A stretch of 64,000 nt of DNA from Octopus sinensis (Eukaryota), in NCBI RefSeq assembly GCF_006345805.1, contig NC_042999.1, positions 72,478,001-72,542,000 on the forward strand, in the 5' to 3' direction. The notes beneath the pieces were generated by a model. It was not told where the DNA came from. It did no database searches and saw only the letters and a list, made by a program, of their open reading frames with translations. Positions 22,862 to 51,910 of the stretch are shown piece after piece. Made by a program: the position numbers and the translations under genes. The stretch's first letter is position 1. Each line of letters starts with the position of its first letter.

Positions 22862-22876
22862 AAGAAATATAATAAT
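22862..22876 (+). repeat. Left 15-bp target-site duplication of the 29-kb block
   Basis: AAGAAATATAATAAT, identical to 51896-51910. Confidence 0.85.
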
Positions 22877-23040
22877 AGTTATCGCCATACTAATATGGCA
22901 TTCTTATAAAAATAAGAAAAAAGCTGTCCGCTTATTAGCTCCATGAGGCCATCGCCTTAAGTTAGCTATTTGATACACAAACTGTATCCATATAACCTTC
23001 GAACAAGGGAGGTCAGTCGCTCCACACTACTTGACCGGCA

Positions 23041-23082
23041 GCTATAGACGCGTTTCGGAGTATTGCCCCTTTTCAATGCAGC
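23041..23082 (-). ncRNA. Type I hammerhead ribozyme, array copy 1 (stem I mismatch variant)
   Basis: Minus strand reads GCTGCA TTGAAAA GGGG CAATA CTCC GAAA CGCG TC TATAGC. Confidence 0.75.
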
Positions 23083-23108
23083 GTAGCCAGCCAGTAGGTG
23101 TCGCTTCC

Positions 23109-26100
23109 TAAATTTTTATTATGATTATAAAAATCTTACAGAGATAGTACATTACAATACAAAACATAATTACAAAAAGTTTACGTTGTTCGTTTGATAT
23201 TTACATATGTTGATTATTGATTATGATACTAGACTTTACTTTTCTCCTTTTTTTTTTAAATAAAAATGATTTTGGCCAGCTAGGTATATCACAGTCAGGA
23301 TTCTTACCCGACAGCCTAAGAGCCCAGAGACTATTTTCTCCCTTCATGATGACCAAGCAGGGTTACTCACACCCACCTTTTTTATCACATCCTTCCATCG
23401 ATTCACATACTTTTTCTGTGTCAGGTTCCTCTTCTCTAAATCCATCTTGCTCTTTAGATGGTATCTGAAGTATTTTAACATACCATATCCAGAGACAAAG
23501 GTTCCTGACACCAAACCTTCCAATCTAGTTCTCCACACACACTCTTTCAGTACTGCCACCGTACAGTGAAAACAAGCCTCACTTCCTTTGAGAGTCCAGC
23601 TGGCGGTATCATCTTATTATAGAACCAGCCGATAGCTGTACTCGTCCCAGATGCGACAACACGTGTTCTACGTAACTTATTAAGCCTGACAGCTCCTGAC
23701 AATGTACAAAAGCGTGCTGGACGGTTTCATCGTCCAACCCACATCTTGGACATGTCGGTGGCACTGACATTCCATGCCTATATAACTTATCGCGAACAGG
23801 TAGAGCATTCCTATAGCACTGCCAAGTCAGGGATTTTTGGTAATTGTCCAAATACCCCGGCTTGAAAGTCTTCTTAAACAGGTCGGATAGTTGATCCTCA
23901 TCGAACCCCAGAGCCCCTCTTAGGACGTCGTCATTTTTTGCCTCTACCATCCTTCTATAAAATGTCGAGGTGGTATTCCCGCAGCCGGCTTTGCCTATCT
24001 TGTGGATCAGCCAGAGTGCCTGTCGGCACTCTTTCTGCCATAAAGTCAGGTTCCGTCTTTTAATGAAACCGGGTTTAAATCTCTCCATAGAGTCCGGTTG
24101 CGGGAAGAAATTATCTGCCAGCGGACTCCACACCTTATCACCTTCCAGGTGAAACCAGAGATGTCTCAGTCTCAGCGCATGCCTGCGCATCATTAACCAA
24201 GGCATCCCCAGCCCACCCTTTAGTGGTTCCTGGCAACACACGGAGCGCCTTACAAGTGGCTTTCCTCCCTTCCACAAAAAGCGGAAAAGGAGTCGATCCA
24301 ACTTGCTTAGCCACAAATCGGGGCAAGGCACGACAGTCAGGCGATAGGTGATTACAGATGCTATAAACACCTGTACCACCTCCGCCCTCCCTTTCAAGGA
24401 AAGATGCCTTCCGGACCACTCCCGAACTATGGCTTCTACCTTGGTCACTACCTCGCTCCAATTTTTCTCCGTCTGGGAGTCTGAACCAAACCAAACTCCA
24501 AGCAATTTAACAGGACCATCTGTCCAGTGTCCAACAACACTGGACGATATCGGCTTGTTCCTCCAGGTGCCGAGGCGCAAACCAGTGGACTTGTCCTTGT
24601 TAACTTTTGCCCCAGCCACCGCTTCGTATCTTCGGAGAGCACCTTCTACACGAGTTAGTTGTGCTTCGTTGGACACGATGAAGGTGACGTCATCCGCATA
24701 CGCAGAAACAGACTTACCGCATCCGATTTCATTAGGATTGCATCTCACCGTCTCCAACTTCCGCAGCAATGGCTCAAGAGCCAAAACGTACAGGAGAGGG
24801 GACAAGGGACATCCTTGACGAACTGAACGCTTAATCGAAAACGGTCCGTTAAGTAACCGTTTATCTGGACTGTGGACTTGATACCGCTGTACATAGCTGA
24901 TATCCACCCGCGAAAGTCAGGACCTAGCCCAGCCGCTTCGAGAACCGTCGCCAGGTACTGATGATCTACCCTATCAAATGCTTTACTTTGGTCTAAATGG
25001 ACCAATGCCCCTCCTTTGCCGGCTAATTGCCCAACCCTGTCTATAGTGTAGCGTAGAAGGTGAAGATTATCTTCGATCGACCTGCCTGGGATTGCACATG
25101 TCTGTGCCTTTCCGACAAGTTTTTCCATGACGACCTTCAACCTTTCTGCTAACACCTTGGCCAAAATCTTTAACTCTACATTAAGTAGAGTTATGGGCCT
25201 ATAATTACTAATATTATCCCCCTTGCTCGGGTCTTTCTGGATCAGCGTCACAACTCCCCGGCTCACAGAACTGGGAATCCTCCCATTCTGTTGCCAGTTT
25301 GCGTAGACGCTTGCCAGTATGTCCCCGAACAAGTCCGGCATACAACAATAAAACTCATAGGGCAGACCATCCAGTCCCGGCGACTTTTCCCGGGCGCATT
25401 CAGCCAAAACCCCTCTTACCTCCGCGGGAGTAATCGGTCCTTCACAGCGTTCCGCTCTGCTTGGCGAGAGCCGAGGCCACCAGCTAGGAAGTTCTGTAAG
25501 TCCTCCCCTCGCTCGAGTGGATCGCCCTCCCCAAACAACCGAGCGAAATGCTTTTGAAAGACCTTCTGTATCTCCTCCTGTCCATAGATTTTGCGTCCCT
25601 GTTCGTCAGTTAAAGACTTAATAGAGGACTTTTTGCCCTTCTGACTCTCCACACGACGTGCCCATCCGGCAACATTAATACCTTCTCGTTTCACTGCACG
25701 TAGCTTAGCTCTGACTCTACATCCTTCATGCTTGGCATTGAGGTGACGGTACAAGATCGTTCTCTCTGCTAACACTCTAGATGCACAGCCAGATCCCATT
25801 GCCTCGTCTAAGTTCTTAACTAAATCGCCTCTATTCTAGTCCTATCTAAACTTAGCTGGTTGCTAAATCTAATGGACTCCAAACGGATGGCTCTTTTGAG
25901 GGCGATCCACCATCTATTATTAATGATGGTTCCACATAATGCCCTCTGGACTAATTCCATAATCCGGTTACGGAAAGCTTCACAAGCCAAAATAGACTTG
26001 TTCATTTTCCAGTATCCGGGTCCCTGTCTATGGCATTTATCTACATGTACCTCACACGTCACTAATTTGTGATCCGTGTAAGGCACAATACAAAATTGTG

Positions 26101-28431
26101 GACAGCTAATGCTATTCCTATCTCGTTCTTTAACAAATACCCTATCTATAACGATCTGCGTGAGCCGTCATTGTTACTCCACGTCCACTGTGGAATGCTC
26201 GGCTCATCCATTCGAAACCGATCTACTAGATTAAAGCTCGTCAGTAGACCCTTAAGGCAAGGATTCCCCCTTCTATCAGACGAGCCCACACTATCTATCC
26301 GCGCATCGATGATAGTGTTGAAATCCCCTACCAATACTACCGTTTTAGACGTCACTAGAAAGTGCTCCAAGTTCCGATAAAAACCAGTCTGCCTACCCTC
26401 ATTAGGAGCATAAACAGCTACCAACCTGAAGGACTGCTTACTTACGTGAGTTACATCGAGGACAACCAGCCTACCTTCTGGGTCCATAAAGACAGTACTT
26501 ACCTGTAAGTCCAAGTTCTTCCTGATAAGGACTGCCACGCCTGCACTTCCTCCTCGGCTAGGAGAAATAAATTTCTCGTAACCATTGAGAAGATGCGAGA
26601 ACGCTTGGGTTCCTCTCATCTTGGACTCGGTGACAATGGCTACATCTATTCTGTGTGTCCTGAGGTCGTCCAGCAAGCAAGCCTGTTTCCATTTCGACCC
26701 CATTCCACGCACATTTATACAGCCCAACTTAATCATCGATGAATGAAGAAAGTTTGTTACTTACGGTTGTGAGAGGGAGCATGGCAGCTTTTGTCTGCCT
26801 GCTTCCCCCACACTCTCCGTTGTTGCTGGGCATTTAACCGGCGTTGCCACCGGGCTCTGGGATGGAGTGGCTGCCGGGCTAATATTCAATTTTCCAGCTA
26901 TCACCTCTTGTGTGACATCTTTAATCAGGTTGTCCCTCACGTGTAGTTGGAAGAGTCTCTCCTTCCATTCCTCCTCTCCAACCTTCGCATACCTCCAATC
27001 CGGGTTTTTTTCCGATGATTTGAAACATTTTATGTTTGGTTTCGCCTTTATGTACCAAACTACTCTCTCGTGAATTGTTTTTTAAAGTTGGGGACTGGGT
27101 TTTTGAAATGCTGGCTAAAATGCTGCCTACAAAAGTAGTGCCAGCGGGGTGGGATTGGATAATTTTTTTGTGTTGTTCTGCGTTTGTTTTTCTTTTTGTT
27201 GGGGTGGGGAGTCGGGGTATTGGTTGGATTTCTTCCTTTTGTTGGTTACAGTCGTATATTCCATTACTTCCAGTTCTTTTCCATTTGATAAAATATTTTC
27301 CACCTCGTTTTCGTTTTCGCTTTGTTTTCCATTCATTTTCTTTTCCTCTTTTGACTTTCATTTTGCTTTTTCCGGGTATTCTCTTTTGTTGTTGCTGTGA
27401 TGTCTGCTTTGTTCTCCACAGCGGTTTGAATGGGGGCATTAACGGGTTTTTTCTTTTTGCACTCTGAGCGGACGTGACCCTTCTGCCCACATTTGAAACA
27501 TCTGGGCCTACGTCCCTCCACCGATACCCGCGCAGTGTGTCCATCCCCCACGAAGACCCTGTCTGGCAAACTCTCCAGCGTTGCATTGTCAGCTTGAACG
27601 ATCATTTCAAGCTGCTGACCTTTCCAAAATTTTGCCTCTTTCATCCTCATGTTTAAAATGTTTAATTTCTCTTCTACGTCGAATACGACCGCTGTTGCTG
27701 CCCACATTACATCGTAACCTGTTGGTATATCCTCTATTGTTATCTTAGCTGTTCTGCGCCCTAAGTACGTGGGCAGCAACAGGATGTCTGCACTCTTCAA
27801 CGTTTGAGTTGAAATTTCCTTCGCTATGCTAGCCGACTCGAAATGCGCTTCAATAGTAGCGCTTCTCACTCCTCGGCCAACATAGCGAACCTTGTTCCAA
27901 ATTGGTGCCATGCACCGTTCTACCAATTCATTTCTTACATCTGCAATCTTTTTTTCCTTAATATTATATACCTTATAAATTACCGTCTTCTCACGGATTG
28001 CTTGTAAGGTGTCAGGGGGCGGTATTATTCTCGTTTCTTCTCCATTCCTTTGTATGAACTTTCTGAACTTGAAGAGATCCTCCATTGTTACTTCCAGTTC
28101 TATAACATTGCCTCCAACGGCTTCCGAAAAACTTTGTTTCTCCTTTGTATCCTTTTGCTTTATAACTTCTCCCATCTCGGGAAAATCAGAATTTGACGTT
28201 AAGTCAAGATCCATAATAAAATGCAAGTGACTTGTCACAAGAGACAAGATAAAAATCAAATCCACACTGAATTAAAGTTCATATATAAAAAGAAATTTTC
28301 TACCCCGAAGGGCGAAAATTACTTTGTTTCACAAGTTAATACTCCAAAAATTGTACGTGTAAATCCAGAACAGAACGAACTAACATAACAGCTTACAGCG
28401 TAAAATAATCCGACGTAATCCAAGGAAAAAT
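23109..28431 (-). mobile_element. Tx1/L1-clade LINE copy 1 (ORF1 ~26761-28214, ORF2 ~23344-26736, both frameshifted)
   Basis: APE, RT and C-terminal zinc-finger fragments in the ORF track; bounded by 17-bp repeats at 23092-23108 and 28432-28448. Confidence 0.95.
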
Positions 28432-28808
28432 CAGTAGGTGTCGCTTCCGACAATCTCTGTTCGATGGTTTTATTTACCTAGTTCGGTGGAATACATCCAC
28501 TTGTTTTCAATAATAGAAATATTAAAAAACTAAGTCTCTCTAAAAGAGAACAGCGGCAGCGTTCCCGGAAAATAATAGTTATCGCCATACTAATATGGCA
28601 TTCTTATAAAAATAAGAAAAAAGCTGTCCGCTCATTAGCTCCATGAGGCCATCGCCTTAAGTAAGCTATTTGATACACAAACTGTATCCATATAACCTTC
28701 GAACAAGGGAGGTCAGTCGCTCCACACTACTTGACCGGCAGCTACAGACGCGTTTCGAAGTATTGCCCCTTTTCAATGCAGCGTAGCCAGCCAGTAGGTG
28801 TCGCTTCC
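28432..28808 (-). repeat. Complete hammerhead module between LINE copies 1 and 2 (360-bp period plus second 17-mer)
   Basis: CAGTAGGTGTCGCTTCC at 28432-28448 and 28792-28808. Confidence 0.9.
28741..28782 (-). ncRNA. Type I hammerhead ribozyme, array copy 2
   Basis: Same fold; stem II GGGG/CTTC with an extra G-U wobble. Confidence 0.8.
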
Positions 28809-31800
28809 TAAATCTTTATTATGATTATAAAAATCTTACAGAGATAGTACATTACAATACAAAACATAATTACAAAAAGTTTACGTTGTTCGTTTGATAT
28901 TTACATATGTTGATTATTGATTATGATACTAGACTTTACTTTTCTCCTTTTTTTTTTAAATTAAAAATGATTTTGGCCAGCTAGGTATATCACAGTCAGG
29001 ATTCTTACCCGACAGCCTAAGAGCCCAGAGACTATTTTCTCCCTTCATGATGACCAAGCAGGGTTACTCACACCCACCTTTTTTATCACATCCTTCCATC
29101 GATTCACATACTTTTTCTGTGTCAGGTTCCTCTTCTCTAAATCCATCTTGCTCTTTAGATGGTATCTGAAGTATTTTAACATACCATATCCAGAGACAAA
29201 GGACTGACACCAAACCTTCCAATCTAGTTCTCCACACACACTCTTTCAGTACTGCCACCGTACAGTGAAAACAAGCCTCACCTTCCTTTGAGAGTCCAGC
29301 TGGCGGTATCATCTTTTATAGAACCAGCCGATAGCTGTACTCGTCCCAGATGCGAACACGTGTTCTACGTAACTTATTAAGCCTGACAGCTCCTGACAAT
29401 GTACAAAAGCGTGCTGGACGGTTTCATCGTCCAACCCACATCTTGGACATGTCGGTGGCACTGACATTCCATGCCTATATAACTTATCGCGAACAGGTAG
29501 AGCATTCCTATAGCACTGCCAAGTCAGGGATTTTTGGTAATTGTCCAAATACCCCGGCTTGAAAGTCTTCTTAAACAGGTCGGATAGTTGATCCTCATCG
29601 AACCCCAGAGCCCCTCTTAGGACGTCGTCATTTTTTGCCTCTACCATCCTTCTATAAAATGTCGAGGTGGTATTCCCGCAGCCGGCTTTGCCTATCTTGT
29701 GGATCAGCCAGAGTGCCTGTCGGCACTCTTTCTGCCATAAAGTCAGGTTCCGTCTTTTAATGAAACCGGGTTTAAATCTCTCCATAGAGTCCGGTTGCGG
29801 GAAGAAATTATCTGCCAGCGGACTCCACACCTTATCACCTTCCAGGTGAAACCAGAGATGTCTCAGTCTCAGCGCATGCCTGCGCATCATTAACCAAGGC
29901 ATCCCCAGCCCACCCTTTAGTGGTTCCTGGCAACACACGGAGCGCCTTACAAGTGGCTTTCCTCCCTTCCACAAAAAGCGGAAAAGGAGTCGATCCAACT
30001 TGCTTAGCCACAAATCGGGGCAAGGCACGACAGTCAGGCGATAGGTGATTACAGATGCTATAACACCTGTACCACCTCCGCCCTCCCTTTCAAGGAAAGA
30101 TGCCTTCCGGACCACTCCCAAACTATGGCTTCTACCTTGGTCACTACCTCGCTCCAATTTTTCTCCGTCTGGGAGTCTGAACCAAACCAAACTCCAAGCA
30201 ATTTAACAGGACCATCTGTCCAGTGTCCAACAACACTGGACGATATCGGCTTGTTCCTCCAGGTGCCGAGGCGCAAACCAGTGGACTTGTCCTTGTTAAC
30301 TTTTGCCCCAGCCACCGCTTCGTATCTTCGGAGAGCACCTTCTACACGAGTTAGTTGTGCTTCGTTGGACACGATGAAGGTGACGTCATCCGCATACGCA
30401 GAAACAGACTTACCGCATCCGATTTCATTAGGATTGCATCTCACCGTCTCCAACTTCCGCAGCAATGGCTCAAGAGCCAAAACGTACAGGAGAGGGGACA
30501 AGGGACATCCTTGACGAACTGAACGCTTAATCGAAAACGGTTCCGTTAAGTAACCGTTTATCTGGACTGTGGACTTGATACCGCTGTACATAGCTGATAT
30601 CCACCCGCGAAAGTCAGGACCTAGCCCAGCCGCTTCGAGAACCGTCGCCAGGTACTGATGATCTACCCTATCAAATGCTTTACTTTGGTCTAAATGGACC
30701 AATGCCCCTCCTTTGCCGGCTAATTGCCCAACCCTGTCTATAGTGTAGCGTAGAAGGTGAAGATTATCTTCGATCGACCTGCCTGGGATTGCACATGTCT
30801 GTGCCTTTCCGACAAGTTTTTCCATGACGACCTTCAACCTTTCTGCTAACACCTTGGCCAAAATCTTTAACTCTACATTAAGTAGAGTTATGGGCCTATA
30901 ATTACTAATATTATCCCCCTTGCTCGGGTCTTTCTGGATCAGCGTCACAACTCCCCGGCTCACAGAACTGGGAATCCTCCCATTCTGTTGCCAGTTTGCG
31001 TAGACGCTTGCCAGTATGTCCCCGAACAAGTCCGGCATACAACAATAAAACTCATAGGGCAGACCATCCAGTCCCGGCGACTTTTCCCGGGCGCATTCAG
31101 CCAAAACCCCTCTTACCTCCGCGGGAGTAATCGGTCCTTCACAGCGTTCCGCTCTGCTTGGCGAGAGCCGAGGCCCACCAGCTAGGAAGTTCTGTAAGTC
31201 CTCCCCTCGCTCGAGTGGATCGCCCTCCCCAAACAACCGAGCGAAATGCTGTTGAAAGACCTTCTGTATCTCCTCCTGTCCATAGATTTTGCGTCCCTGT
31301 TCGTCAGTTAAAGACTTAATAGAGGACTTTTTGCCCTTCTGACTCTCCACACGACGTGCCCATCCGGCAACATTAATACCTTCTCGTTTCACTGCACGTA
31401 GCTTAGCTCTGACTCTACATCCTTCATGCTTGGCATTGAGGTGACGGTACAAGATCGTTCTCTCTGCTAACACTCTAGATGCACAGCCAGATCCCATTGC
31501 CTCGTCTAAGTTCTTAACTAAATCGCCCTCTATTCTAGTCCTATCTAAACTTAGCTGGTTGCTAAATCTAATGGACTCCAAACGGATGGCTCTTTTGAGG
31601 GCGATCCACCATCTATTATTAATGATGGTTCCACATAATGCCCTCTGGACTAATTCCATAATCCGGTTACGGAAAGCTTCACAAGCCAAAATAGACTTGT
31701 TCATTTTCCAGTATCCGGGTCCCTGTCTATGGCATTTATCTACATGTACCTCACACGTCACTAATTTGTGATCCGTGTAAGGCACAATACAAAATTGTGG

Positions 31801-34153: not shown

Positions 34154-34464
34154 CAGTAGGTGTCGCTTCCGACAATCTCTGTTCGATGGTTTTATTTACC
34201 TAGTTTCGGTGGAATACATCCACTTGTTTTCAATAATAGAAATATTAAAATAACTAAGTCTCTCTAAAAGAGAACAGCGGCAGCGTTCCCGGAAAATAAT
34301 AGTTATCGCCATACTAATATGGCATTCTTATAAAAATAAGAAAAAAGCTGTCCGCTTATTAGCTCCATGAGGCCATCGCCTTAAGTTAGCTATTTGATAC
34401 ACAAACTGTATCCATATAACCTTCGAACAAGGGAGGTCAGTCGCTCCACACTACTTGACCGGCA

Positions 34465-34506
34465 GCTACAGACGCGTTTCGGAGTATTGCCCCTTTTCAA
34501 TGCAGC
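34465..34506 (-). ncRNA. Type I hammerhead ribozyme, array copy 3 (consensus)
   Basis: Minus strand reads GCTGCA TTGAAAA GGGG CAATA CTCC GAAA CGCG TC TGTAGC; it lies inside module 34154-34532. Confidence 0.82.
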
Positions 34507-34532
34507 GTAGCCAGCCAGTAGGTGTCGCTTCC

Positions 34533-40229: not shown

Positions 40230-40255
40230 GTAGCCAGCCAGTAGGTGTCGCTTCC

Positions 40256-43200: not shown

Positions 43201-45602
43201 CCTCACACGTCACTAATTTGTGATCCGTGTAAGGCACAATACAAAATTGTGGACAGCTAATGCTATTCCTATCTCGTTCTTTAACAAATACCCTATCTAT
43301 ATACGATCTGCGTGAGCCGTCATTGTTACTCCACGTCCACTGTGGAATGCTCGGCTCATCCATTCGAAACCGATCTACTAGATTAAAGCTCGTCAGTAGA
43401 CCCTTAAGGCAAGGATTCCCCCTTCTATCAGACGAGCCCACACTATCTATCCGCGCATCGATGATAGTGTTGAAATCCCCTACCAATACTACCGTTTTAG
43501 ACGTCACTAGAAAGTGCTCCAAGTTCCGATAAAAACCAGTCTGCCTACCCTCATTAGGAGCATAAACAGCTACCAACCTGAAGGACTGCTTACTTACGTG
43601 AGTTACATCGAGGACAACCAGCCTACCTTCTGGGTCCATAAAGACAGTACTTACCTGTAAGTCCAAGTTCTTCCTGATAAGGACTGCCACGCCTGCACTT
43701 CCTCCTCGGCTAGGAGAAATAAATTTCTCGTAACCATTGAGAAGATGCGAGAACGCTTGGGTTCCTCTCATCTTGGACTCGGTGACAATGGCTACATCTA
43801 TTCTGTGTGTCCTGAGGTCGTCCAGCAAGCAAGCCTGTTTCCATTTCGACCCCATTCCACGCACATTTATACAGCCCAACTTAATCATCGATGAATGAAG
43901 AAAGTTTGTTACTTACGGTTGTGAGAGGGAGCATGGCAGCTTTTGTCTGCCTGCTTCCCCCACACTCTCCGTTGTTGCTGGGCATTTAACCGGCGTTGCC
44001 ACCGGGCTCTGGGATGGAGTGGCTGCCGGGCTAATATTCAATTTTCCAGCTATCACCTCTTGTGTGACATCTTTAATCAGGTTGTCCTCACGTGTAGTTG
44101 GGAGTCTCTCCTTCCATTCCTCCTCTCCAACCTTCGCATACCTCCAATCCGGGTTTTTTCCGATGATTTGAAACATTTTATGTTTGGGTTCGCCTTTATG
44201 TACCAAACTACTCTCTCGTTTTTTGTGTTATAAGCAATGCACCTATCGGTTTTTTTGAATCCTTTTAAAGTTGGGGACTGGGGTTTAATGAAATGCTGGC
44301 CTACAAAAGTAGTGCCAGCGGGGTGGGATTGGATAATTTTTTTGTGTTGTTCTGCGTTTGTTTTTCTTTTTGTTTGGGGTGGGGAGTCCGGGGTATTGGA
44401 TTTCTTCCTTTTGTTGGTTACAGTCGTATATTCCATTACTTCCAGTTCTTTTCCATTTGATAAAATATTTTCCACCTCGTTTTCGTTTTCGCTTTGTTTT
44501 CCATTCATTTTCTTTTCCTCCTTTTGACTTTCATTTTGCTTTTTCCGGGTATTCTCTTTTGTTGTTGCTGTGATGTCTGCTTTGTTCTCCACAGCGGTTT
44601 GAATGGGGGCATTAACGGGTTTTTTCTTTTTGCACTCTGAGCGGACGTGACCCTTCTGCCCACATTTGAAACATCTGGGCCTACGTCCCTCACCGATACC
44701 CGCGCAGTGTGTCCATCCCCCACGAAGACCCTGTCTGGCAAACTCTCCAGCGTTGCATTGTCAGCTTGAACGATCATTTCAAGCTGCTGACCTTTCCAAA
44801 ATTTTGCCTCTTTCATCCTCATGTTTAAAATGTTTAATTTCTCTTCTACGTCGAATACGACCGCTGTTGCTGCCCACATTACATCGTAACCTGTTGGTAT
44901 ATCCTCTATTGTTATCTTAGCTGTTCTGCGCCCTAAGTACGTGGGCAGCAACAGGATGTCTGCACTCTTCAACGTTTGAGTTGAAATTTCCTTCGCTATG
45001 CTAGCCGACTCGAAATGCGCTTCAATAGTAGCGCTTCTCACTCCTCGGCCAACATAGCGAACCTTGTTCCAAATTGGTGCCATGCACCGTTCTACCAATT
45101 CATTTCTTACATCTGCAATCTTTTTTTCCTTAATATATATACCTTATAAATTACCGTCTTCTCACGGATTGCTTGTAAGGTGTCAGGGGGCGGTATTATT
45201 CTCGTTTCTTCTCCATTCCTTTGTATGAACTTTCTGAACTTGAAGAGATCCTCCATTGTTACTTCCAGTTCTATAACATTGCCTCCAACGGCTTCCGAAA
45301 AACTTTGTTTCTCCTTTGTATCCTTTTGCTTTATAACTTCTCCCATCTCGGGAAAATCAGAATTTGACGTTAAGTCAAGATCCATAATAAAATGCAAGTG
45401 ACTTGTCACAAGAGACAAGATAAAAATCAAATCCACACTGAATTAAAGTTCATATATAAAAAGAAATTTTCTACCCCGAAGGGCGAAAATTACTTTGTTT
45501 CACAAGTTAATACTCCAAAAATTGTACGTGTAAATCCAGAACAGAACGAACTAACATAACAGCTTACAGCGTAAAATAATCCGACGTAATCCAAGGAAAA
45601 AT
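40256..45602 (-). mobile_element. Tx1/L1-clade LINE copy 4 (ORF1 ~43913-45385, ORF2 ~40491-43888)
   Basis: Same domains; 17-bp repeats at 40239-40255 and 45603-45619. Confidence 0.95.
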
Positions 45603-45891
45603 CAGTAGGTGTCGCTTCCGACAATCTCTGTTCGATGGTTTTATTTACCTAGTTTCGGTGGAATACATCCACTTGTTTTCAATAATAGAAATATTAAAAT
45701 AACTAAGTCTCTCTAAAAGAGAACAGCGGCAGCGTTCCCGGAAAATAATAGTTATCGCCATACTAATATGGCATTCTTATAAAAATAAGAAAAAAGCTGT
45801 CCGCTTATTAGCTCCATGAGGCCATCGCCTTAAGTTAGCTATTTGATACACAAACTGTATCTATATAACCTTCGACACCTACGGCTGGCAC

Positions 45892-45932
45892 GCTGCATGA
45901 AAAAGGGCAATACTCCGAAACGCGTCTGTAGC
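45892..45932 (+). ncRNA. Hammerhead ribozyme copy at the inversion junction, core apparently damaged
   Basis: GCTGCA TGAAAAA GGG CAATA CTCC GAAA CGCG TC TGTAGC; one base shorter than the consensus. Confidence 0.5.
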
Positions 45933-46457
45933 TGCCGGTCAAGTAGTGTGGAGCGACTGACCTCCTTGTTCGAAGGTTATATGGATACAGTTTGTGTATC
46001 AAATAGCTAACTTAAGGCGATGGCCTCATGGAGCTAATAAGCGGACAGCTTTTTTCTTATTTTTATAAGAATGCCATATTAGTATGGCGATAACTATTAT
46101 TTTCCGGGAACGCTGCCGCTGTTCTCTTTTAGAGAGACTTCGTTATTTTAATATTTCTATTATTGAAAACAAGTGGATGTATTCCACCGAAACTAGGTAA
46201 ATAAAACCATCGAACAGAGATTGTCGGAAGCGACACCTACTGATTTTCCTTGGATTACGTCGGATTATTTTACGCTGTAAGCTGTTATGTTAGTTCGTCT
46301 GTTCTGGATTTACACGTACAATTTTTGGAGTATTAACTTGTGAAACAAAGTAATTTTCGCCCTTCGGGGTAGAAAATTTCTTTTTATATATGAACTTTAA
46401 TTCAGTGTGGATTTGATTTTTATCTTGTCTCTTGTGACAAGTCACTTGCATTTTATT

Positions 46458-47936
46458 ATGGATCTTGACTTAACGTCAAATTCTGATTTTCCCGAGATGG
46501 GAGAAGTTATAAAGCAAAAGGATACAAAGGAGAAACAAAGTTTTTCGGAAGCCGTTGGAGGCAATGTTATAGAACTGGAAGTAACAATGGAGGATCTCTT
46601 CAAGTTCAGAAAGTTCATACAAAGGAATGGAGAAGAAACGAGAATAATACCGCCCCCTGACACCTTACAAGCAATCCGTGAGAAGACGGTAATTTATAAG
46701 GTATATAATATTAAGGAAAAAAAGATTGCAGATGTAAGAAATGAATTGGTAGAACGGTGCATGGCACCAATTTGGAACAAGGTTCGCTATGTTGGCCGAG
46801 GAGTGAGAAGCGCTACTATTGAAGCGCATTTCGAGTCGGCTAGCATAGCGAAGGAAATTTCAACTCAAACGTTGAAGAGTGCAGACATCCTGTTGCTGCC
46901 CACGTACTTAGGGCGCAGAACAGCTAAGATAACAATAGAGGATATACCAACAGGTTACGATGTAATGTGGGCAGCAACAGCGGTCGTATTCGACGTAGAA
47001 GAGAAATTAAACATTTTAAACATGAGGATGAAAGAGGCAAAATTTTGGAAAGGTCAGCAGCTTGAAATGATCGTTCAAGCTGACAATGCAACGCTGGAGA
47101 GTTTGCCAGACAGGGTCTTCGTGGGGGATGGACACACTGCGCGGGTATCGGTTGAGGGACGTAGGCCCAGATGTTTCAAATGTGGGCAGAAGGGTCACGT
47201 CCGCTCAGAGTGCAAAAAGAAAAAACCCGTTAATGCCCCCATTCAAACCGCTGTGGAGAACAAAGCAGACATCACAGCAACAACAAAAGAGAATACCCGG
47301 AAAAAGCAAAATGAAAGTCAAAAGGAGGAAAAGAAAATGAATGGAAAACAAAGCGAAAACGAAAACGAGGTGGAAAATATTTTATCAAATGGAAAAGAAC
47401 TGGAAGTAATGGAATATACGACTGTAACCAACAAAAGGAAGAAATCCAATACCCCGGACTCCCCACCCCAAACAAAAAGAAAAACAAACGCAGAACAACA
47501 CAAAAAAATTATCCAATCCCACCCCGCTGGCACTACTTTTGTAGGCCAGCATTTCATTAAACCCCAGTCCCCAACTTTAAAAGGATTCAAAAAAACCGAT
47601 AGGTGCATTGCTTATAACACAAAAAACGAGAGAGTAGTTTGGTACATAAAGGCGAAACCAAACATAAAATGTTTCAAATCATCGGAAAAAAACCCGGATT
47701 GGAGGTATGCGAAGGTTGGAGAGGAGGAATGGAAGGAGAGACTCTTCCAACTACACGTGAGGGACAACCTGATTAAAGATGTCACACAAGAGGTGATAGC
47801 TGGAAAATTGAATATTAGCCCGGCAGCCACTCCATCCCAGAGCCCGGTGGCAACGCCGGTTAAATGCCCAGCAACAACGGAGAGTGTGGGGGAAGCAGGC
47901 AGACAAAAGCTGCCATGCTCCCTCTCACAACCGTAA
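46458..47936 (+). CDS. LINE ORF1 nucleic-acid-binding protein with CCHC zinc knuckle
   Basis: Open 492-aa frame from the ATG at 46458 (the track starts at an upstream GTG, 46407). CFKCGQKGHVRSEC knuckle followed by a Lys/Glu-rich low-complexity tail, typical of Tx1-type ORF1. Confidence 0.9.
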   Translation: MDLDLTSNSDFPEMGEVIKQKDTKEKQSFSEAVGGNVIELEVTMEDLFKFRKFIQRNGEETRIIPPPDTLQAIREKTVIYKVYNIKEKKIADVRNELVERCMAPIWNKVRYVGRGVRSATIEAHFESASIAKEISTQTLKSADILLLPTYLGRRTAKITIEDIPTGYDVMWAATAVVFDVEEKLNILNMRMKEAKFWKGQQLEMIVQADNATLESLPDRVFVGDGHTARVSVEGRRPRCFKCGQKGHVRSECKKKKPVNAPIQTAVENKADITATTKENTRKKQNESQKEEKKMNGKQSENENEVENILSNGKELEVMEYTTVTNKRKKSNTPDSPPQTKRKTNAEQHKKIIQSHPAGTTFVGQHFIKPQSPTLKGFKKTDRCIAYNTKNERVVWYIKAKPNIKCFKSSEKNPDWRYAKVGEEEWKERLFQLHVRDNLIKDVTQEVIAGKLNISPAATPSQSPVATPVKCPATTESVGEAGRQKLPCSLSQP

Positions 47937-47960
47937 GTAACAAACTTTCTTCATTCATCG

Positions 47961-50900
47961 ATGATTAAGTTGGGCTGTATAAATGTGCGTGGAATGGGGT
48001 CGAAATGGAAACAGGCTTGCTTGCTGGACGACCTCAGGACACACAGAATAGATGTAGCCATTGTCACCGAGTCCAAGATGAGAGGAACCCAAGCGTTCTC
48101 GCATCTTCTCAATGGTTACGAGAAATTTATTTCTCCTAGCCGAGGAGGAAGTGCAGGCGTGGCAGTCCTTATCAGGAAGAACTTGGACTTACAGGTAAGT
48201 ACTGTCTTTATGGACCCAGAAGGTAGGCTGGTTGTCCTCGATGTAACTCACGTAAGTAAGCAGTCCTTCAGGTTGGTAGCTGTTTATGCTCCTAATGAGG
48301 GTAGGCAGACTGGTTTTTATCGGAACTTGGAGCACTTTCTAGTGACGTCTAAAACGGTAGTATTGGTAGGGGATTTCAACACTATCATCGATGCGCGGAT
48401 AGATAGTGTGGGCTCGTCTGATAGAAGGGGGAATCCTTGCCTTAAGGGTCTACTGACGAGCTTTAATCTAGTAGATCGGTTTCGAATGGATGAGCCGAGC
48501 ATTCCACAGTGGACGTGGAGTAACAATGACGGCTCACGCAGATCGTATATAGATAGGGTATTTGTTAAAGAACGAGATAGGAATAGCATTAGCTGTCCAC
48601 AATTTTGTATTGTGCCTTACACGGATCACAAATTAGTGACGTGTGAGGTACATGTAGATAAATGCCATAGACAGGGACCCGGATACTGGAAAATGAACAA
48701 GTCTATTTTGGCTTGTGAAGCTTTCCGTAACCGGATTATGGAATTAGTCCAGAGGGCATTATGTGGAACCATCATTAATAATAGATGGTGGATCGCCCTC
48801 AAAAGAGCCATCCGTTTGGAGTCCATTAGATTTAGCAACCAGCTAAGTTTAGATAGGACTAGAATAGAGGGCGATTTAGTTAAGAACTTAGACGAGGCAA
48901 TGGGATCTGGCTGTGCATCTAGAGTGTTAGCAGAGAGAACGATCTTGTACCGTCACCTCAATGCCAAGCATGAAGGATGTAGAGTCAGAGCTAAGCTACG
49001 TGCAGTGAAACGAGAAGGTATTAATGTTGCCGGATGGGCACGTCGTGTGGAGAGTCAGAAGGGCAAAAAGTCCTCTATTAAGTCTTTAACTGACGAACAG
49101 GGACGCAAAATCTATGGACAGGAGGAGATACAGAAGGTCTTTCAACAGCATTTCGCTCGGTTGTTTGGGGAGGGCGATCCACTCGAGCGAGGGGAGGACT
49201 TACAGAACTTCCTAGCTGGTGGGCCTCGGCTCTCGCCAAGCAGAGCGGAACGCTGTGAAGGACCGATTACTCCCGCGGAGGTAAGAGGGGTTTTGGCTGA
49301 ATGCGCCCGGGAAAAGTCGCCGGGACTGGATGGTCTGCCCTATGAGTTTTATTGTTGTATGCCGGACTTGTTCGGGGACATACTGGCAAGCGTCTACGCA
49401 AACTGGCAACAGAATGGGAGGATTCCCAGTTCTGTGAGCCGGGGAGTTGTGACGCTGATCCAGAAAGACCCGAGCAAGGGGGATAATATTAGTAATTATA
49501 GGCCCATAACTCTACTTAATGTAGAGTTAAAGATTTTGGCCAAGGTGTTAGCAGAAAGGTTGAAGGTCGTCATGGAAAAACTTGTCGGAAAGGCACAGAC
49601 ATGTGCAATCCCAGGCAGGTCGATCGAAGATAATCTTCACCTTCTACGCTACACTATAGACGGGGTTGGGCAATTAGCCGGCAAAGGAGGGGCATTGGTC
49701 CATTTAGACCAAAGTAAAGCATTTGATAGGGTAGATCATCAGTACCTGGCGACGGTTCTCGAAGCGGCTGGGCTAGGTCCTGACTTTCGCGGGTGGATAT
49801 CAGCTATGTACAGCGGTATCAAGTCCACAGTCCAGAAACGGTTACTTAACGGAACCGTTTTCGATTAAGCGTTCAGTTCGTCAAGGGTGTCCCTTGTCCC
49901 CTCTCCTGTACGTTTTGGCTCTTGAGCCATTGCTGCGGAAGTTGGAGACGGTGAGATGCAATCCTAATGAAATCGGATGCGGTAAGTCTGTTTCTGCGTA
50001 TGCGGATGACGTCACCTTCATCGTGTCCAACGAAGCACAACTAACTCGTGTAGAAGGTGCTCTCCGAAAATACGAAGCGGTGGCTGGGGCAAAAGTTAAC
50101 AAGGACAAGTCCACTGGTTTGCGCCTCGGCACCTGGAGGAACAAGCCGATATCGTCCAGTGTTGTTGGACACTGGACAGATGGTCCTGTTAAATTGCTTG
50201 GAGTTTGGTTTGGTTCAGACTCCCAGACGGAGAAAAATTGGAGCGAGGTAGTGACCAAGGTAGAAGCCATAGTTTGGGAGTGGTCCGGAAGGCATCTTTC
50301 CTTGAAAGGGAGGGCGGAGGTGGTACAGGTGTTTATAGCATCTGTAATCACCTATCGCCTGACTGTCGTGCCTTGCCCCGATTTGTGGCTAAGCAAGTTG
50401 GATCGACTCCTTTTCCGCTTTTTGTGGAAGGGAGGAAAGCCACTTGTAAGGCGCTCCGTGTGTTGCCAGGAACCACTAAAGGGTGGGCTGGGGATGCCTT
50501 GGTTAATGATGCGCAGGCATGCGCTGAGACTGAGACATCTCTGGTTTCACCTGGAAGGTGATAAGGTGTGGAGTCCGCTGGCAGATAATTTCTTCCCGCA
50601 ACCGGACTCTATGGAGAGATTTAAACCCGGTTTCATTAAAAGACGGAATCTGACTTTATGGCAGAAAGAGTGCCGACAGGCACTCTGGCTGATCCACAAG
50701 ATAGGCAAAGCCGGCTGCGGGAATACCACCTCGACATTTTATAGAAGGATGGTAGAGGCAAAAAATGACGACGTCCTAAGAGGGTCTCTGGGGTTCGATG
50801 AGGATCAACTATCCGACCTGTTTAAGAAGACTTTCAAGCCGGGGTATTTGGACAATTACCAAAAATCCCTGACTTGGCAGTGCTATAGGAATGCTCTACC

Positions 50901-51357
50901 TGTTCGCGATAAGTTATATAGGCATGGAATGTCAGTGCCACCGACATGTCCAAGATGTGGGTTGGACGATGAAACCGTCCAGCACGCTTTTGTACATTGT
51001 CAGGAGCTGTCAGGCTTAATAAGTTACGTAGAACACGTGTTGTCGCATCTGGGACGAGTACAGCTATCGGCTGGTTCTATAATAAAGATGATACCGCCAG
51101 CTGGACTCTCAAAGGAAGGTGAGGCTTGTTTTCACTGTACGGTGGCAGTACTGAAAGAGTGTGTGTGGAGAACTAGATTGGAAGGTTTGGTGTCAGGATC
51201 CTTTGTCTCTGGATACGGTATGTTAAAATACTTCAGATACCATCTAAAGAGCAAGATGGATTTAGAGAAGAGGAACCTGACACAGAAAAAGTATGTGAAT
51301 CGATGGAAGGATGTGATAAAAAAGGTGGGTGTGAGTAACCCTGCTTGGTCATCATGA
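47961..51357 (+). pseudogene. LINE ORF2 (APE endonuclease - reverse transcriptase - CCHC finger), one 2-bp deletion
   Basis: Motifs GCINVRG, TESK, YAPN, GDFN, SYIDR, TDH; KSPGLDG, YRPITLLN, DQSKAFDRV, QGCPLSP, YADD; CPRCGLDDETVQHAFVHC. The other copies read CAGATAAACGG where this one reads CAGAAACGG (~49836); restoring it gives ~1132 aa. Confidence 0.95.
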
Positions 51358-51607
51358 AGGGAGAAAATAGTCTCTGGGCTCTTAGGCTGTCGGGTAAGAA
51401 TCCTGACTGTGATATACCTAGCTGGCCAAAATCATTTTTAATTTAAAAAAAAAAAAAGGAGAAAAGTAAAGTCTAGTATCATAATCAATAATCAACATAT
51501 GTAAATATCAAACGAACAACGTAAACTTTTTGTAATTATGTTTTGTATTGTAATGTACTATCTCTGTAAGATTTTTATAATCATAATAAAGATTTAGGAA
51601 GCGACAC

Positions 51608-51678
51608 CTACTGGCTGGCTACGCTGCATTGAAAAGGGGCAATACTCCGAAACGCGTCTGTAGCTGCCGGTCAAGTAG
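51608..51678 (+). ncRNA. Type I hammerhead ribozyme with extended stem I, predicted cleavage after 51658 (GUC)
   Basis: Stem I GCTGCA(51623-28)/TGTAGC(51659-64); core TTGAAAA; stem II GGGG-CAATA-CTCC; GAAA; CGCG; TC. Beyond a TAC/T bulge, GGCTGGC/GCCGGTC and CTACT/AGTAG continue the helix. Confidence 0.85.
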
Positions 51679-51895
51679 TGTGGAGCGACTGACCTCCCTT
51701 GTTCGAAGGTTATATGGATACAGTTTGTGTATCAAATAGCTAACTTAAGGCGATGGCCTCATGGAGCTAATAAGCGGACAGCTTTTTTCTTATTTTTATA
51801 AGAATGCCATATTAGTATGGCGATAACTATTATTTTCCGGGAACGCTGCCGCTGTTCTCTTTTAGAGAGACTTAGTTATTTTAATATTTCTATTA

Positions 51896-51910
51896 AAGAA
51901 ATATAATAAT
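51896..51910 (+). repeat. Right 15-bp target-site duplication of the 29-kb block
   Basis: AAGAAATATAATAAT begins exactly where similarity to the module stops. Confidence 0.85.

What the first reader, a model, noticed from the sequence alone, without database searches (positions are those of the whole stretch)
22862..51910. Candidate new system: an L1/Tx1 LINE fused to a hammerhead-ribozyme module and amplified as a 29-kb concatemer
Seen: five ~5.72-kb units, each a complete two-ORF LINE without poly(A) plus a 362-bp module folding as a hammerhead. The units are head-to-tail with no host DNA between them, and the block is bracketed by one 15-bp duplication. Established: hammerheads are typical of Penelope-like elements and retrozymes, which yield unit-length and circular RNAs. 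Ribozymes known from LINEs such as R2 are mostly HDV-like 5' ribozymes. I know of no hammerhead-processed L1/Tx1 element, but could not search. Inference: read-through transcription and self-cleavage at successive GUC sites would release a ~5.73-kb RNA (e.g. 45927-51658) carrying both ORFs. Its 5'-OH and 2',3'-cyclic phosphate ends could be ligated into a circle, and rolling-circle or multimer reverse transcription would explain the tandem array.
Basis: partly seen in the sequence, partly recalled or inferred. Interest (0 to 1): 0.95.

Follow-up and report, generated by a model that had tools for sequence, protein, structure and literature searches.

The report
LINE nested in amplified hammerhead retrozyme
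A complete L1-type jumping gene sits inside a small hammerhead-ribozyme repeat (a "retrozyme"), and the 5.7-kb composite was copied into this site as four tandem units plus one inverted unit, apparently by the mechanism that spreads the small retrozymes rather than by the jumping gene's own ribozyme-driven cycle.

Summary
The block is real (22,877-51,895) and is flanked by an exact 15-bp target-site duplication. It is not five head-to-tail units. Four units lie on the minus strand and a fifth is inverted, meeting them head-to-head at 45,873-45,875.

No assembled copy has both ORFs open, but the majority-rule unit does: ORF1 with a CCHC knuckle, and ORF2 with APE, RT and zf-RVT, L1-like. Rfam finds no hammerhead. 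The 362-nt module nevertheless carries a canonical metazoan type-I hammerhead architecture with a U3-A8 core covariant, and it is homologous to a small retrozyme 8 kb away.

The LINE (5,354 nt, no poly(A)) is inserted into that retrozyme monomer with a 17-bp duplication. Both outer edges of the block fall inside the module, at +170/176 and +237 nt from the cleavage site. The small retrozyme insertion has the same two start positions and the same head-to-head layout. This is the published Penelope-like element (PLE)/retrozyme insertion signature, and a PLE ORF lies in the window.

The cDNAs crossed five intact ribozyme sites, so cleavage was not needed. Hammerhead-less relatives of the LINE also form tandem arrays.

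Best reading: a LINE carried as cargo in a retrozyme. This is a new variant of a known kind.

The parts
22862..22876 (.). Left copy of the 15-bp target-site duplication AAGAAATATAATAAT. Its last 6 nt (AATAAT) are also complementary to module RNA AUUAUU at +171..+176, giving microhomology for second-strand priming.
   Evidence: 2 matches, 0.02 expected; sequence
22877..45875 (-). Minus-strand arm: a 3' partial module, three full 5.7-kb composite units (Ua, Ub, Uc) and one unit (Ud) that is 5'-truncated at +44..50 of its hammerhead.
45873..45875 (.). Head-to-head inversion junction with 3-nt microhomology (CGA). The adjoining 97 nt (45,873-45,969) carry 6 small differences from the consensus.
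45873..51895 (+). Plus-strand arm of 1.05 composite unit: it starts 53 nt upstream of a hammerhead site and ends at +237 of the next one.
51896..51910 (.). Right copy of the 15-bp target-site duplication.
46243..51596 (+). L1/Tx1-type LINE proper (5,354 nt). The 5' UTR runs to 46,457, ORF1 is 46,458-47,936 (CCHC knuckle), and ORF2 is 47,961-51,357 (APE + RT + zf-RVT, with one frameshift near 49,870-49,893). The 3' end is ...CATAATAAAGATTTA with no poly(A).
23109..28431 (-). LINE copy of unit Ua (frameshifts; ~35-nt deletion and 11-nt insertion in ORF1).
28809..34153 (-). LINE copy of unit Ub (frameshifts; shares five ORF1 variants with Uc).
34533..39876 (-). LINE copy of unit Uc.
40256..45602 (-). 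LINE copy of unit Ud.
51597..51895 (+). Retrozyme-like module, 3' copy on the plus arm. It contains the 17-mer GGAAGCGACACCTACTG (51,597-51,613) and the hammerhead motif (51,623-51,664, C17 = 51,658), and ends at the reverse-transcription start site (+237).
45873..46242 (+). Retrozyme-like module, 5' copy on the plus arm. It is 5'-truncated, its hammerhead is damaged by indels (C17 = 45,926), and it ends with the second 17-mer at 46,226-46,242.
28432..28808 (-). Full retrozyme-like module between Ua and Ub (17-mers at both ends; hammerhead C17 at 28,747, helix II variant CUUC).
34154..34532 (-). Full retrozyme-like module between Ub and Uc (hammerhead C17 at 34,471).
39877..40255 (-). Full retrozyme-like module between Uc and Ud (hammerhead C17 at 40,194, helix II variant CUUU).
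22877..23108 (-). Terminal module of the minus arm (hammerhead C17 at 23,047). It ends at +170..176, the second reverse-transcription start site.
45603..45875 (-). Innermost module fragment of the minus arm (from the 17-mer down to +44..50); it lacks its hammerhead.
59318..59996 (.). Comparator, not part of the block: a small ~360-nt-period retrozyme insertion in a (TA)n tract. A minus partial copy (59,318-59,482) meets a plus ~1.4-mer (59,480-59,996) head-to-head. It has a canonical CUGACGA hammerhead (C17 = 59,777). Its edges lie at +175..182 and about +229.
62..1909 (-). Context: a Penelope-like element ORF (RVT_1 plus C-terminal GIY-YIG), a candidate trans-acting machinery.

Best explanation
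A full-length L1/Tx1-type LINE inserted by ordinary target-primed reverse transcription into one monomer of a ~362-nt hammerhead retrozyme, duplicating 17 bp of it. This created a 5.73-kb composite: retrozyme 5' part, LINE, retrozyme 3' part.

The composite then behaved as a giant retrozyme. An RNA longer than one unit, either an uncut read-through multimer or a religated circle, was reverse-transcribed at a staggered 15-bp break in AT-rich DNA. Both 3' ends of the break served as primers.

The bottom strand primed at module position +237 and produced the 1.05-unit plus arm. The top strand annealed through AATAAT/AUUAUU at +170..176 and produced the 4-unit minus arm. The two cDNAs were joined head-to-head at a CGA microhomology.

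The cis-acting signals are in the retrozyme module, not in the LINE. The enzyme is most likely whichever one mobilises the small retrozymes of this genome. Published work points to Penelope-like elements, and one lies in this window; the LINE's own ORF2p is not excluded. The hammerhead is a passenger feature of the module. It is probably dimer-dependent and was not cut in the template.

Shown: the anatomy, the homology and the coincident edges. Inferred: the order of events, the RNA template, the enzyme, and whether some units were added later by unequal exchange.
For: (1) One insertion: an exact 15-bp TSD abuts both edges.

(2) Head-to-head 4+1 layout with both outer edges being 3'-side ends.

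(3) Both edges fall inside the 362-nt module, which is 6% of the unit, at +170/176 and +237. The independent small retrozyme insertion at 59,318-59,996 has edges at +175..182 and about +229 and the same head-to-head layout.

(4) The module is homologous to that retrozyme over about 250 nt: local score 63 against shuffles of 30 +/- 5, and 203 of 322 aligned positions identical.

(5) The LINE is bracketed by the 17-mer in all five units. The upstream 17-mer is native retrozyme sequence, pairing in the helix I rod. The LINE ends in the clade-typical ...AATAAA(G) terminus seen in family R. The LINE 3' UTR shows no similarity to the module (z from -1.6 to 2.1).

[quoted passage not shown] The PLE protein cleaves and extends both strands, and hammerhead cleavage is not required (PMC11167929). 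[quoted passage not shown] Retrozymes are proposed to be PLE-dependent.

(7) A PLE ORF (RT + GIY-YIG) lies at 62-1,909, and a PLE-type GIY-YIG remnant at 55.4 kb.

(8) Hammerhead architecture: helix I 6 bp, helix II 4 bp with G10.1-C11.1, and a 6-nt palindrome across helix III, as described for metazoan type-I motifs. U3-A8 is a documented natural covariant. 97% of cells are paired, with 10 of 13 pairs changed on both sides. The predicted dimer forms the intermolecular ACGCGU helix.
Against: - No read-level or RNA data. The unit count and the junction rest on one assembly, and the 97 nt beside the junction are unusually error-rich.
- The enzyme is not identified. The window's PLE cannot be linked by sequence to the module, because its pLTR lies outside the window.
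- L1-type twin priming gives the same topology, so the LINE's own ORF2p could be responsible.
- Relatives of this LINE form tandem arrays without any retrozyme, so a LINE-intrinsic tendency to form arrays may contribute.
- The 17-bp bracket is formally symmetric; only the nativeness argument orients it.
- Independent site-specific filling of each monomer would give the same sequence.
- The covariation test is partly circular, because two rows were selected by a descriptor that requires pairing.
- Only one genomic locus of the composite is available.
Confidence: 0.5

Rival explanations
1. The composite is an autonomous hammerhead-processed LINE: read-through RNA self-cleaves at successive GUC sites, the 5.73-kb monomer is ligated into a circle, and the LINE's own RT copies the circle by rolling-circle reverse transcription to give the concatemer.
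For: - The consensus unit has intact ORF1 and ORF2.
- There is one hammerhead-type motif per unit.
- No RNase H domain is detected in ORF2, so a template could survive repeated passes.
- The cDNAs are longer than one unit.
- Small metazoan retrozymes do form circles (PMC7229834).
- The edges lie at arbitrary phase relative to the LINE ends.
Against: - Reverse transcription did not start or stop at the cleavage site and passed five intact sites. That is compatible with a circle but is not evidence for cleavage.
- The ribozyme has a 1-2-bp helix III that needs a partner copy, which here lies 5.7 kb away instead of 360 nt. Rfam does not recognise it.
- Five variants shared by Ub and Uc are not expected from one circle without later events.
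- The start sites are those of the small retrozyme, and the LINE 3' UTR is unrelated to the module.
- Hammerhead-less relatives also form arrays.
Confidence: 0.13
2. Retrozyme first, LINE later. An ordinary ~2.2-kb retrozyme insertion (4.4 monomers on the minus strand plus 1.8 inverted, with a 15-bp TSD) was subsequently filled by a sequence-specific Tx1-type LINE, which inserted independently into the same 17-bp site of every intact monomer.
For: - Tx1-group LINEs are classically target-specific for tandem multicopy sequences (established knowledge; the named Ciona hit is).
- Identical 17-bp duplications flank every LINE, and LINE orientation follows monomer orientation in both arms.
- Family R junctions could also reflect repeated insertion into a regenerated TSD.
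Against: - All 5 of 5 intact target sites are occupied.
- All copies are full length with identical junctions and are >99% identical.
- This needs five independent events, against one for a pre-formed composite.
- The neighbouring small retrozyme is empty, although it belongs to a different subfamily.
Confidence: 0.17
3. Local DNA-level amplification. A small initial insertion, with one composite unit per arm, expanded to four units on one side by unequal sister-chromatid exchange or replication slippage between the modules flanking the LINE, as described for TE tandem dimers that seed satellites.
For: - The modules act like direct repeats flanking the LINE.
- The adjacent units Ub and Uc share five private variants, as expected if one mutated unit was duplicated.
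- The concept is documented for other TEs (PMC5932611, listed but not read in detail).
Against: It still needs the composite and the inverted arm to pre-exist, so it modifies the main explanation rather than replacing it. Unit divergence is very low and mosaic, which does not discriminate.
Confidence: 0.12
4. Assembly artefact. The unit number and/or the inversion were created by the assembler from a high-copy family or from fold-back chimeric long reads.
For: - Differences between copies are dominated by homopolymer indels.
- Errors are about 20-fold enriched beside the inversion junction.
- PLE-like tandem/inverted structures are known to trouble assemblies (PMC8557442).
Against: - The matching 15-bp TSD at the two outer edges ties both arms to one insertion.
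- The junction has a 94-nt asymmetric spacer and a 3-nt microhomology rather than a perfect fold-back.
- The units carry genuine shared substitutions.
- The same topology occurs in the small retrozyme 8 kb away.
Confidence: 0.08

Closest known systems
Metazoan non-LTR retrozymes (Cervera & de la Pena 2020, PMC7229834)
   Same: Both have a ~360-nt monomer, a type-I hammerhead with a 6-bp helix I, a 4-bp helix II and a short palindromic helix III, low GC, tandem copies and a TSD longer than 4 bp. The module is demonstrably homologous to a small retrozyme in the same window.
   Different: Known units are 170-400 nt and non-coding. Here the repeating unit is 5.73 kb and carries a complete two-ORF LINE, the core is the U3-A8 covariant, and circular RNA has not been shown.
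Penelope-like elements, and PLE-mediated trans-mobilisation of foreign genes framed by pLTRs (PMC8557442, PMC3846280, PMC11167929)
   Same: Hammerhead-bearing repeats flank a coding region. There are partial tandems plus a head-to-head inverted 5'-truncated copy, a variable TSD of roughly 8-15 bp, and AT/(TA)n targets. Cleavage of the hammerhead is not needed, and cargo unrelated to the PLE can be moved.
   Different: The coding region here is an APE-type L1-like LINE, not a PLE RT with GIY-YIG. The cargo is itself an autonomous retrotransposon. There are four or more full tandem units rather than a partial tandem. No 30-40-bp 'tail' was identified.
L1/Tx1-group LINEs
   Same: ORF1 has a CCHC knuckle and ORF2 has APE, RT and a C-terminal zinc-binding domain. 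ORF2 aligns with human L1 ORF2p over 860 aa. The LINE is flanked by a 17-bp duplication, and insertion into a repetitive target is typical of Tx1-type elements.
   Different: There is no poly(A) tail. It is embedded in, and co-amplified with, a ribozyme-bearing repeat. Its sub-clade was not resolved by phylogeny.
L1 twin priming (Ostertag & Kazazian 2001; from memory, not retrieved here)
   Same: An inversion arises when both 3' ends of a staggered break prime on the same RNA. The junction is resolved by microhomology, and a TSD flanks the whole insertion.
   Different: In classical twin priming the two parts are non-overlapping pieces of one unit-length polyadenylated RNA. Here each arm exceeds one unit and priming occurs at two specific non-poly(A) sites.
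LINEs with 5' HDV-like ribozymes (R2 and others; PMC3774820)
   Same: A self-cleaving motif is associated with a non-LTR element in tandem-repeat contexts, with co-transcript processing proposed.
   Different: That is a different ribozyme class belonging to the LINE itself and cutting at its exact 5' end. Here the hammerhead belongs to the host retrozyme and lies 62 nt downstream of the LINE's 3' end.
Family R: a hammerhead-less L1/Tx1-like LINE in ENA assembly ERZ21867824 (loci L002-L009)
   Same: ORF2 is about 41% identical. It has no poly(A), a conserved AAATAAA(G) 3' terminus, and occurs in long head-to-tail arrays.
   Different: Its array junction is LINE 3' end directly to LINE 5' end, with no retrozyme, no hammerhead and no inverted arm in the loci seen. 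Solo copies with a 14-bp TSD exist.

Membership tests
Hammerhead ribozyme (type I) | Conserved core boxes CUGANGA ... GAAA ... UH at a three-way junction | tested here: inconclusive
   The core reads UUGAAAA ... GAAA ... UC. U4, G5, A6, A9, G12-A14 and U16.1/C17 are present. C3 and G8 are both replaced, by U3 and A8, which preserves their pairing. This is a natural covariant reported in PLE hammerheads.
Hammerhead ribozyme (type I) | Helices I, II and III with the metazoan architecture (I = 6 bp, II = 4 bp with G10.1-C11.1, III = 1-2 bp plus a small palindromic loop) | tested here: met
   97% of cells are paired and 10 of 13 pairs changed on both sides, though the rows were partly selected by the descriptor. 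The predicted dimer forms the ACGCGU helix III.
Hammerhead ribozyme (type I) | Match to curated Rfam hammerhead covariance models | tested here: not met
   No hit at gathering score or at E<=10. The canonical-core motif at 59,777 is also missed, so the models are insensitive to this short-helix-III class.
Hammerhead ribozyme (type I) | Site-specific self-cleavage | not testable with these tools
   This needs in vitro transcription of monomer and dimer constructs. The genomic copies only show that the template was intact at five sites.
Metazoan non-LTR retrozyme | Tandem DNA repeats each carrying a type-I hammerhead | tested here: met
   There is one motif per unit in all units, and the module is homologous to a small retrozyme.
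Metazoan non-LTR retrozyme | Small (about 170-400 nt) non-coding unit | tested here: not met
   The module alone is 362 nt, but the repeating unit is 5,733 nt and encodes ORF1 and ORF2.
Metazoan non-LTR retrozyme | [quoted passage not shown] | not testable with these tools
   No transcriptome data are available for this genome.
Penelope-like element | PLE-type RT with a GIY-YIG endonuclease | tested here: not met
   ORF2 has Exo_endo_phos (APE), RVT_1 and zf-RVT and matches L1 ORF2p best. The PLE ORFs in the window lie elsewhere, at 62-1,909 and 55.4 kb.
Penelope-like element | Insertion architecture: pLTR-like direct repeats with a hammerhead, an inverted 5'-truncated copy head-to-head, a TSD, and AT/(TA)n targets | tested here: met
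   compared with PMC8557442 and PMC3846280.
L1/Tx1-group LINE | ORF2 with an N-terminal APE endonuclease, RT and a C-terminal Cys-rich domain; ORF1 nucleic-acid-binding protein | tested here: met
   The named remote hits are the Ciona pol-like protein and Chlorella Zepp.
L1/Tx1-group LINE | Placement within the Tx1 sub-clade by RT phylogeny | not tested
   No phylogeny was built. 'L1 superfamily' is supported; 'Tx1' is a lead from the Ciona hit only.
L1/Tx1-group LINE | Insertion flanked by a TSD; 3' poly(A) or a defined tail | tested here: met
   A 17-bp duplication flanks each LINE. There is no poly(A), but a defined ...AATAAA(G) terminus is shared with family R.

The most novel reading that the evidence does not exclude
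The composite is a functional 'autonomous retrozyme'. In this reading, a 5.7-kb hammerhead-processed, possibly circular, RNA is translated into LINE ORF1p and ORF2p and is reverse-transcribed by them from signals in the retrozyme module. An L1/Tx1-type LINE, rather than (or as well as) Penelope-like elements, would then be the long-sought mobiliser of metazoan retrozymes. Circular or multimeric templates would explain LINE tandem arrays more generally, including those of the hammerhead-less relatives.
Probability: 0.12. Interest if true: 0.9.

Novelty: new variant of a known kind. Interest (0 to 1): 0.62.

Why it matters
Metazoan retrozymes are regarded as tiny non-coding parasites whose mobilising enzyme is still inferred rather than shown. 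PLE-type insertions are poorly understood mechanistically.

This locus shows that a retrozyme module can carry more than 5 kb of cargo, here a whole autonomous LINE, through what looks like the same insertion pathway. The two reverse-transcription start sites are preserved to within about a dozen bases. That maps the cis-acting region of a retrozyme to the ~240 nt downstream of the hammerhead. It also shows that templates uncut at the ribozyme are used, and it gives a natural construct for testing which RT (PLE or LINE) does the work.

It shows one retrotransposon hitch-hiking inside another class of retroelement. It also explains how multi-kilobase LINE arrays without poly(A) can arise and confuse annotation and assembly.

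If the LINE's own proteins drive the composite, it would be the first protein-coding retrozyme.

Tried and rejected
- Rfam at gathering score and at E<=10 found no ribozyme in the window, and a scan at E<=1 found none in L001/L002. The weak K_chan_RES and miRNA-model hits are chance or AT-hairpin matches.
- My first hammerhead descriptor had a regex bug and returned nothing. It was rewritten.
- PLE, DIRS or another RT class for the coding part is rejected by Pfam and PDB matches.
- The module is not a 5S, snRNA or tRNA target gene of a Tx1-type element: no Rfam or ARAGORN hit.
- The 15-bp TSD is not regenerated at every unit junction, as may happen in family R. The internal junctions do not contain it.
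- There is no LINE/SINE-style shared 3' tail between the LINE and the retrozyme.
- No closer relatives of the LINE carry a module. The best hit is 58% identical on a 3-kb contig with only 113 nt of 3' flank, and the source genome is not in the protein collection.
- I could not link the window's PLE to the module by sequence. Its pLTR lies outside the window.
- I looked for a 5' edge of a family R array, to see whether inverted arms are a LINE-clade trait, but none was captured in six loci.
- The search with the GIY-YIG remnant returned a single unnamed relative.
- One paper look-up failed on a term that was too short and was not repeated.

Full report
**1. What is in the sequence**

The region 22,877-51,895 is made of ~5.7-kb repeats with start-to-start spacings of 5,700-5,732 nt. 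That is not what the sequence shows.

GC skew changes sign near 46 kb. All long matches between 46,298-51,901 and the rest of the block are inverted repeats. A BLAST of the last unit against the window gives the geometry:
- A minus-strand arm runs 22,877-45,875. It holds a 3' partial, three complete units and one unit truncated at its 5' side.
- A plus-strand arm runs 45,873-51,895 and holds 1.05 unit.
- The two arms meet head-to-head at 45,873-45,875, where CGA is shared by both.
- Both outer edges of the block are therefore 3'-side ends of the repeat.

The 15-mer AAGAAATATAATAAT abuts both edges (22,862-22,876 and 51,896-51,910). These are its only two occurrences in the window, against 0.02 expected by chance. 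The two arms therefore belong to one insertion with a target-site duplication (TSD).

**2. State of the copies**

As assembled, no unit has both ORFs intact. The plus copy is the best: ORF1 is open and ORF2 has one frameshift.

An alignment of the five units shows mostly private indels. 81 of 116 indel columns are in homopolymers, which points to long-read consensus noise. Unit Ua also has a real ~35-nt deletion and an 11-nt insertion.

The majority-rule unit (5,733 nt) has an open ORF1 (492 aa from the first ATG) and an open ORF2 (1,132 aa), separated by one stop codon.

The units are genuinely different copies. Ub and Uc share five ORF1 substitutions (three synonymous, two not) that Ua, Ud and Ue lack, and four further sites show other groupings.

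The 97 nt next to the inversion junction carry six small differences from the consensus, roughly 20 times the array average. I cannot tell whether this reflects weak read support or error-prone joining.

**3. What the unit encodes**

ORF1 has a CCHC zinc knuckle. ORF2 has an APE-type endonuclease, RVT_1 and zf-RVT. ORF2 aligns with human LINE-1 ORF2p over 860 residues at E=4e-66, against about 1e-23 for R2 proteins. Its named remote relatives are a Ciona pol-like protein and Chlorella Zepp. 'L1 superfamily' is therefore supported. 'Tx1' remains a lead, because I built no phylogeny. The LINE has no poly(A) tail.

**4. The hammerhead**

Rfam finds no hammerhead at the gathering score or at E<=10. 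By eye, and with a descriptor of my own, every unit contains:

GCUGCA-UUGAAAA-GGGG-CAAUA-CUCC-GAAA-CGCG-UC|UGUAGC

This has a 6-bp helix I that continues into a long rod, a 4-bp helix II closed by G10.1-C11.1, and a 1-2-bp helix III whose sequence ACGCGU is a perfect palindrome. Cervera & de la Pena describe exactly this architecture for canonical metazoan type-I hammerheads, which are thought to act as dimers (PMC4209133).

The core differs at two positions. C3 and G8, which pair with each other, are both replaced, by U3 and A8. The same paper reports U3-A8 as a natural covariant in Schistosoma PLE hammerheads.

The descriptor is expected to hit 0.045 times per 64 kb by chance. It finds the array motif and two further loci: a canonical CUGACGA motif with C17 at 59,777, and another U3-A8 motif with C17 at 21,915. 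Rfam misses these too.

Across the distinct versions, 97% of cells pair and 10 of 13 pairs show changes on both sides, while slid controls collapse. Two of the six rows were selected by a descriptor that demands pairing, so part of that result is by construction.

A two-copy fold predicts the intermolecular ACGCGU helix III: -82.3 kcal/mol against -76.2 for two monomers.

So the motif is a credible hammerhead of the dimer-dependent kind. Whether it cleaves is untested.

**5. The module is a retrozyme monomer and the LINE is nested in it**

At 59,318-59,996 there is a small ~360-nt-period repeat carrying the canonical hammerhead, that is, a non-LTR retrozyme in the sense of PMC7229834. The module aligns with it over about 250 nt. 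The local score is 63 against shuffles of 30 +/- 5, and 203 of 322 aligned positions are identical.

Three observations orient the nesting:
- The upstream 17-mer is native retrozyme sequence, because it forms the 5' strand of the helix I rod.
- The LINE's end at the 17-mer...CATAATAAAG(ATTTA), matches the conserved terminus of its relatives, which is a stem-loop with compensatory changes followed by AAATAAA(G).
- The LINE's 3' UTR has no significant similarity to the module (z from -1.6 to 2.1).

The simplest reading is that a 5,354-nt LINE (46,243-51,596 in the plus copy) inserted into a retrozyme monomer and duplicated 17 bp, or 17-25 bp if imperfect matches are counted.

**6. How the block was made**

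Both outer edges lie inside the module, which is only 6% of the unit. The right edge is at +237 nt from the cleavage site. The left edge is at +170 to +176, where the last six bases of the TSD (AATAAT) are complementary to the RNA's AUUAUU.

The small retrozyme insertion has the same design. A minus-oriented partial copy meets a plus-oriented 1.4-mer head-to-head, and its outer edges lie at +175..182 and about +229. It sits in a (TA)n-type microsatellite. Two independent insertions, 0.7 kb and 29 kb long, thus share topology and both start positions to within about a dozen bases.

This is the published signature of PLE-type insertion:
- A purified PLE protein cleaves and extends both DNA strands, initiates internally on the RNA, and does not need hammerhead cleavage (PMC11167929).
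- Retrozymes are proposed to depend on PLEs (PMC7229834; bioRxiv 10.64898/2026.07.22.740005).

[quoted passage not shown] It also holds a GIY-YIG remnant with two cysteines inside the core at 55.4 kb.

I therefore read the block as a retrozyme-type insertion of a composite RNA whose cargo is a LINE.

The two cDNAs together passed five intact hammerhead sites. The template was therefore an uncut multimer or a religated circle, and the locus offers no evidence that cleavage occurred.

Classical L1 twin priming would give the same topology, so the LINE's own ORF2p is not excluded as the enzyme.

**7. Relatives**

The closest ORF2 relative (58% identity) lies on a 3-kb contig that is too short to be informative.

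A family about 41% identical in another assembly (family R) is informative:
- It forms long, pure head-to-tail arrays (L002, L005, L008).
- It also has solo copies with a 14-bp TSD (L004).
- Array junctions join the LINE 3' end directly to the next 5' end. At one array edge, 14 nt of the next unit's 5' start are present.
- No hammerhead is found by Rfam in L001/L002 or by my descriptor in L001-L006.
- No inverted arm appears in the loci seen.

Tandem arrays in this LINE clade therefore do not require a ribozyme. The window's array differs from the family R type in two ways: its period includes the retrozyme, and its edges lie in the retrozyme.

I did not capture a 5' edge of a family R array, so I cannot say whether inverted arms occur there.

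**8. Rivals**

Nothing in the locus requires cleavage, the variants shared by Ub and Uc do not fit one circle without later events, and the start sites are retrozyme-specific.
- A sequence-specific LINE may have independently filled all five intact sites of a pre-existing retrozyme insertion (0.17). This gives the same sequence but needs five full-length, identical-junction events and 5/5 occupancy.
- Later unequal exchange may have added units (0.12). This modifies the main model rather than replacing it.
- An assembly artefact (0.08) is opposed by the matching TSD, the asymmetric microhomology junction, the genuine inter-unit variants and the same topology in the small retrozyme.

**9. Novelty and verdict**

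Searches of the held literature found no description of a hammerhead-associated L1/Tx1 element or of a protein-coding retrozyme. The closest precedent is PLE-mediated trans-mobilisation of genes framed by pLTRs.

I file this as a new variant of a known kind: a retrozyme/PLE-type insertion whose cargo is an entire autonomous LINE, amplified to five units.

The finding remains interesting for three reasons. It locates the cis-acting region of a metazoan retrozyme. It shows that uncut templates and more than 5 kb of cargo are tolerated. It offers a natural test of which reverse transcriptase moves retrozymes. Interest 0.62. The more radical reading, an autonomous coding retrozyme driven by LINE proteins, has a probability of about 0.12.

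Noticed in passing
window 62-1909 (-): [quoted passage not shown] It abuts a (TA)n tract at 1,991-2,101, and its 3' repeat lies beyond the window start.
   Followed up: partly
window 55418-55867 (-): [quoted passage not shown] It has no RT beside it and only one unnamed relative in the protein collection (P0047, 74% identity).
   Followed up: partly
window 59318-59996: A small hammerhead retrozyme (~360-nt period, canonical CUGACGA core, missed by Rfam) inserted head-to-head in a (TA)n/(ACATAT)n microsatellite. It served as the comparator for the block.
   Followed up: yes
window 21880-21921: A third hammerhead-like motif (U3-A8 core, ACCGGU palindrome, helix I 5/6) in AT-rich DNA about 950 nt left of the block. 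A 73-nt inverted repeat lies next to it at 21,976-22,129.
   Followed up: no
window 46163-46208 (and the same phase in each unit): A 46-nt segment of the module that is absent from the small retrozyme. It resembles a second, degenerate hammerhead box (UUGAAAA..GUGGA/UCCAC..GAAACUAGGUA) and begins exactly at the right-edge/RT-start position.
   Followed up: no
window 22700-22850: A tRNA-derived-SINE-like sequence directly left of the TSD. From memory only, it resembles the abundant octopus SINE, which would make the host a cephalopod. This is not verified.
   Followed up: no
window 60913-63912 (-): Another APE-type LINE (RVT_1 with a PHD/C1-like finger, with Exo_endo_phos upstream), unrelated to the array LINE.
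   Followed up: partly
window 17851-18654 (+): A mariner/Tc1-type Transposase_1 fragment.
   Followed up: no
window 60246-60470: A 64-nt tandem repeat of about 3.5 copies, just right of the small retrozyme.
   Followed up: no
L002, L005, L008 (ENA ERZ21867824): A hammerhead-less L1/Tx1-like LINE family forms long pure head-to-tail arrays (periods 6,821 and about 6,440 nt). It has a conserved 3' stem-loop showing compensatory changes, followed by AAATAAA(G). At L005:14,170-14,183 the array edge carries 14 nt of the next unit's 5' start. The mechanism is unresolved.
   Followed up: partly
window 51887-51910: The target's bottom strand at the right edge (ATATTTCT) is complementary to the first cDNA bases (AGAAATAT), which could form a snap-back hairpin. 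This may be chance in AT-rich DNA.
   Followed up: no
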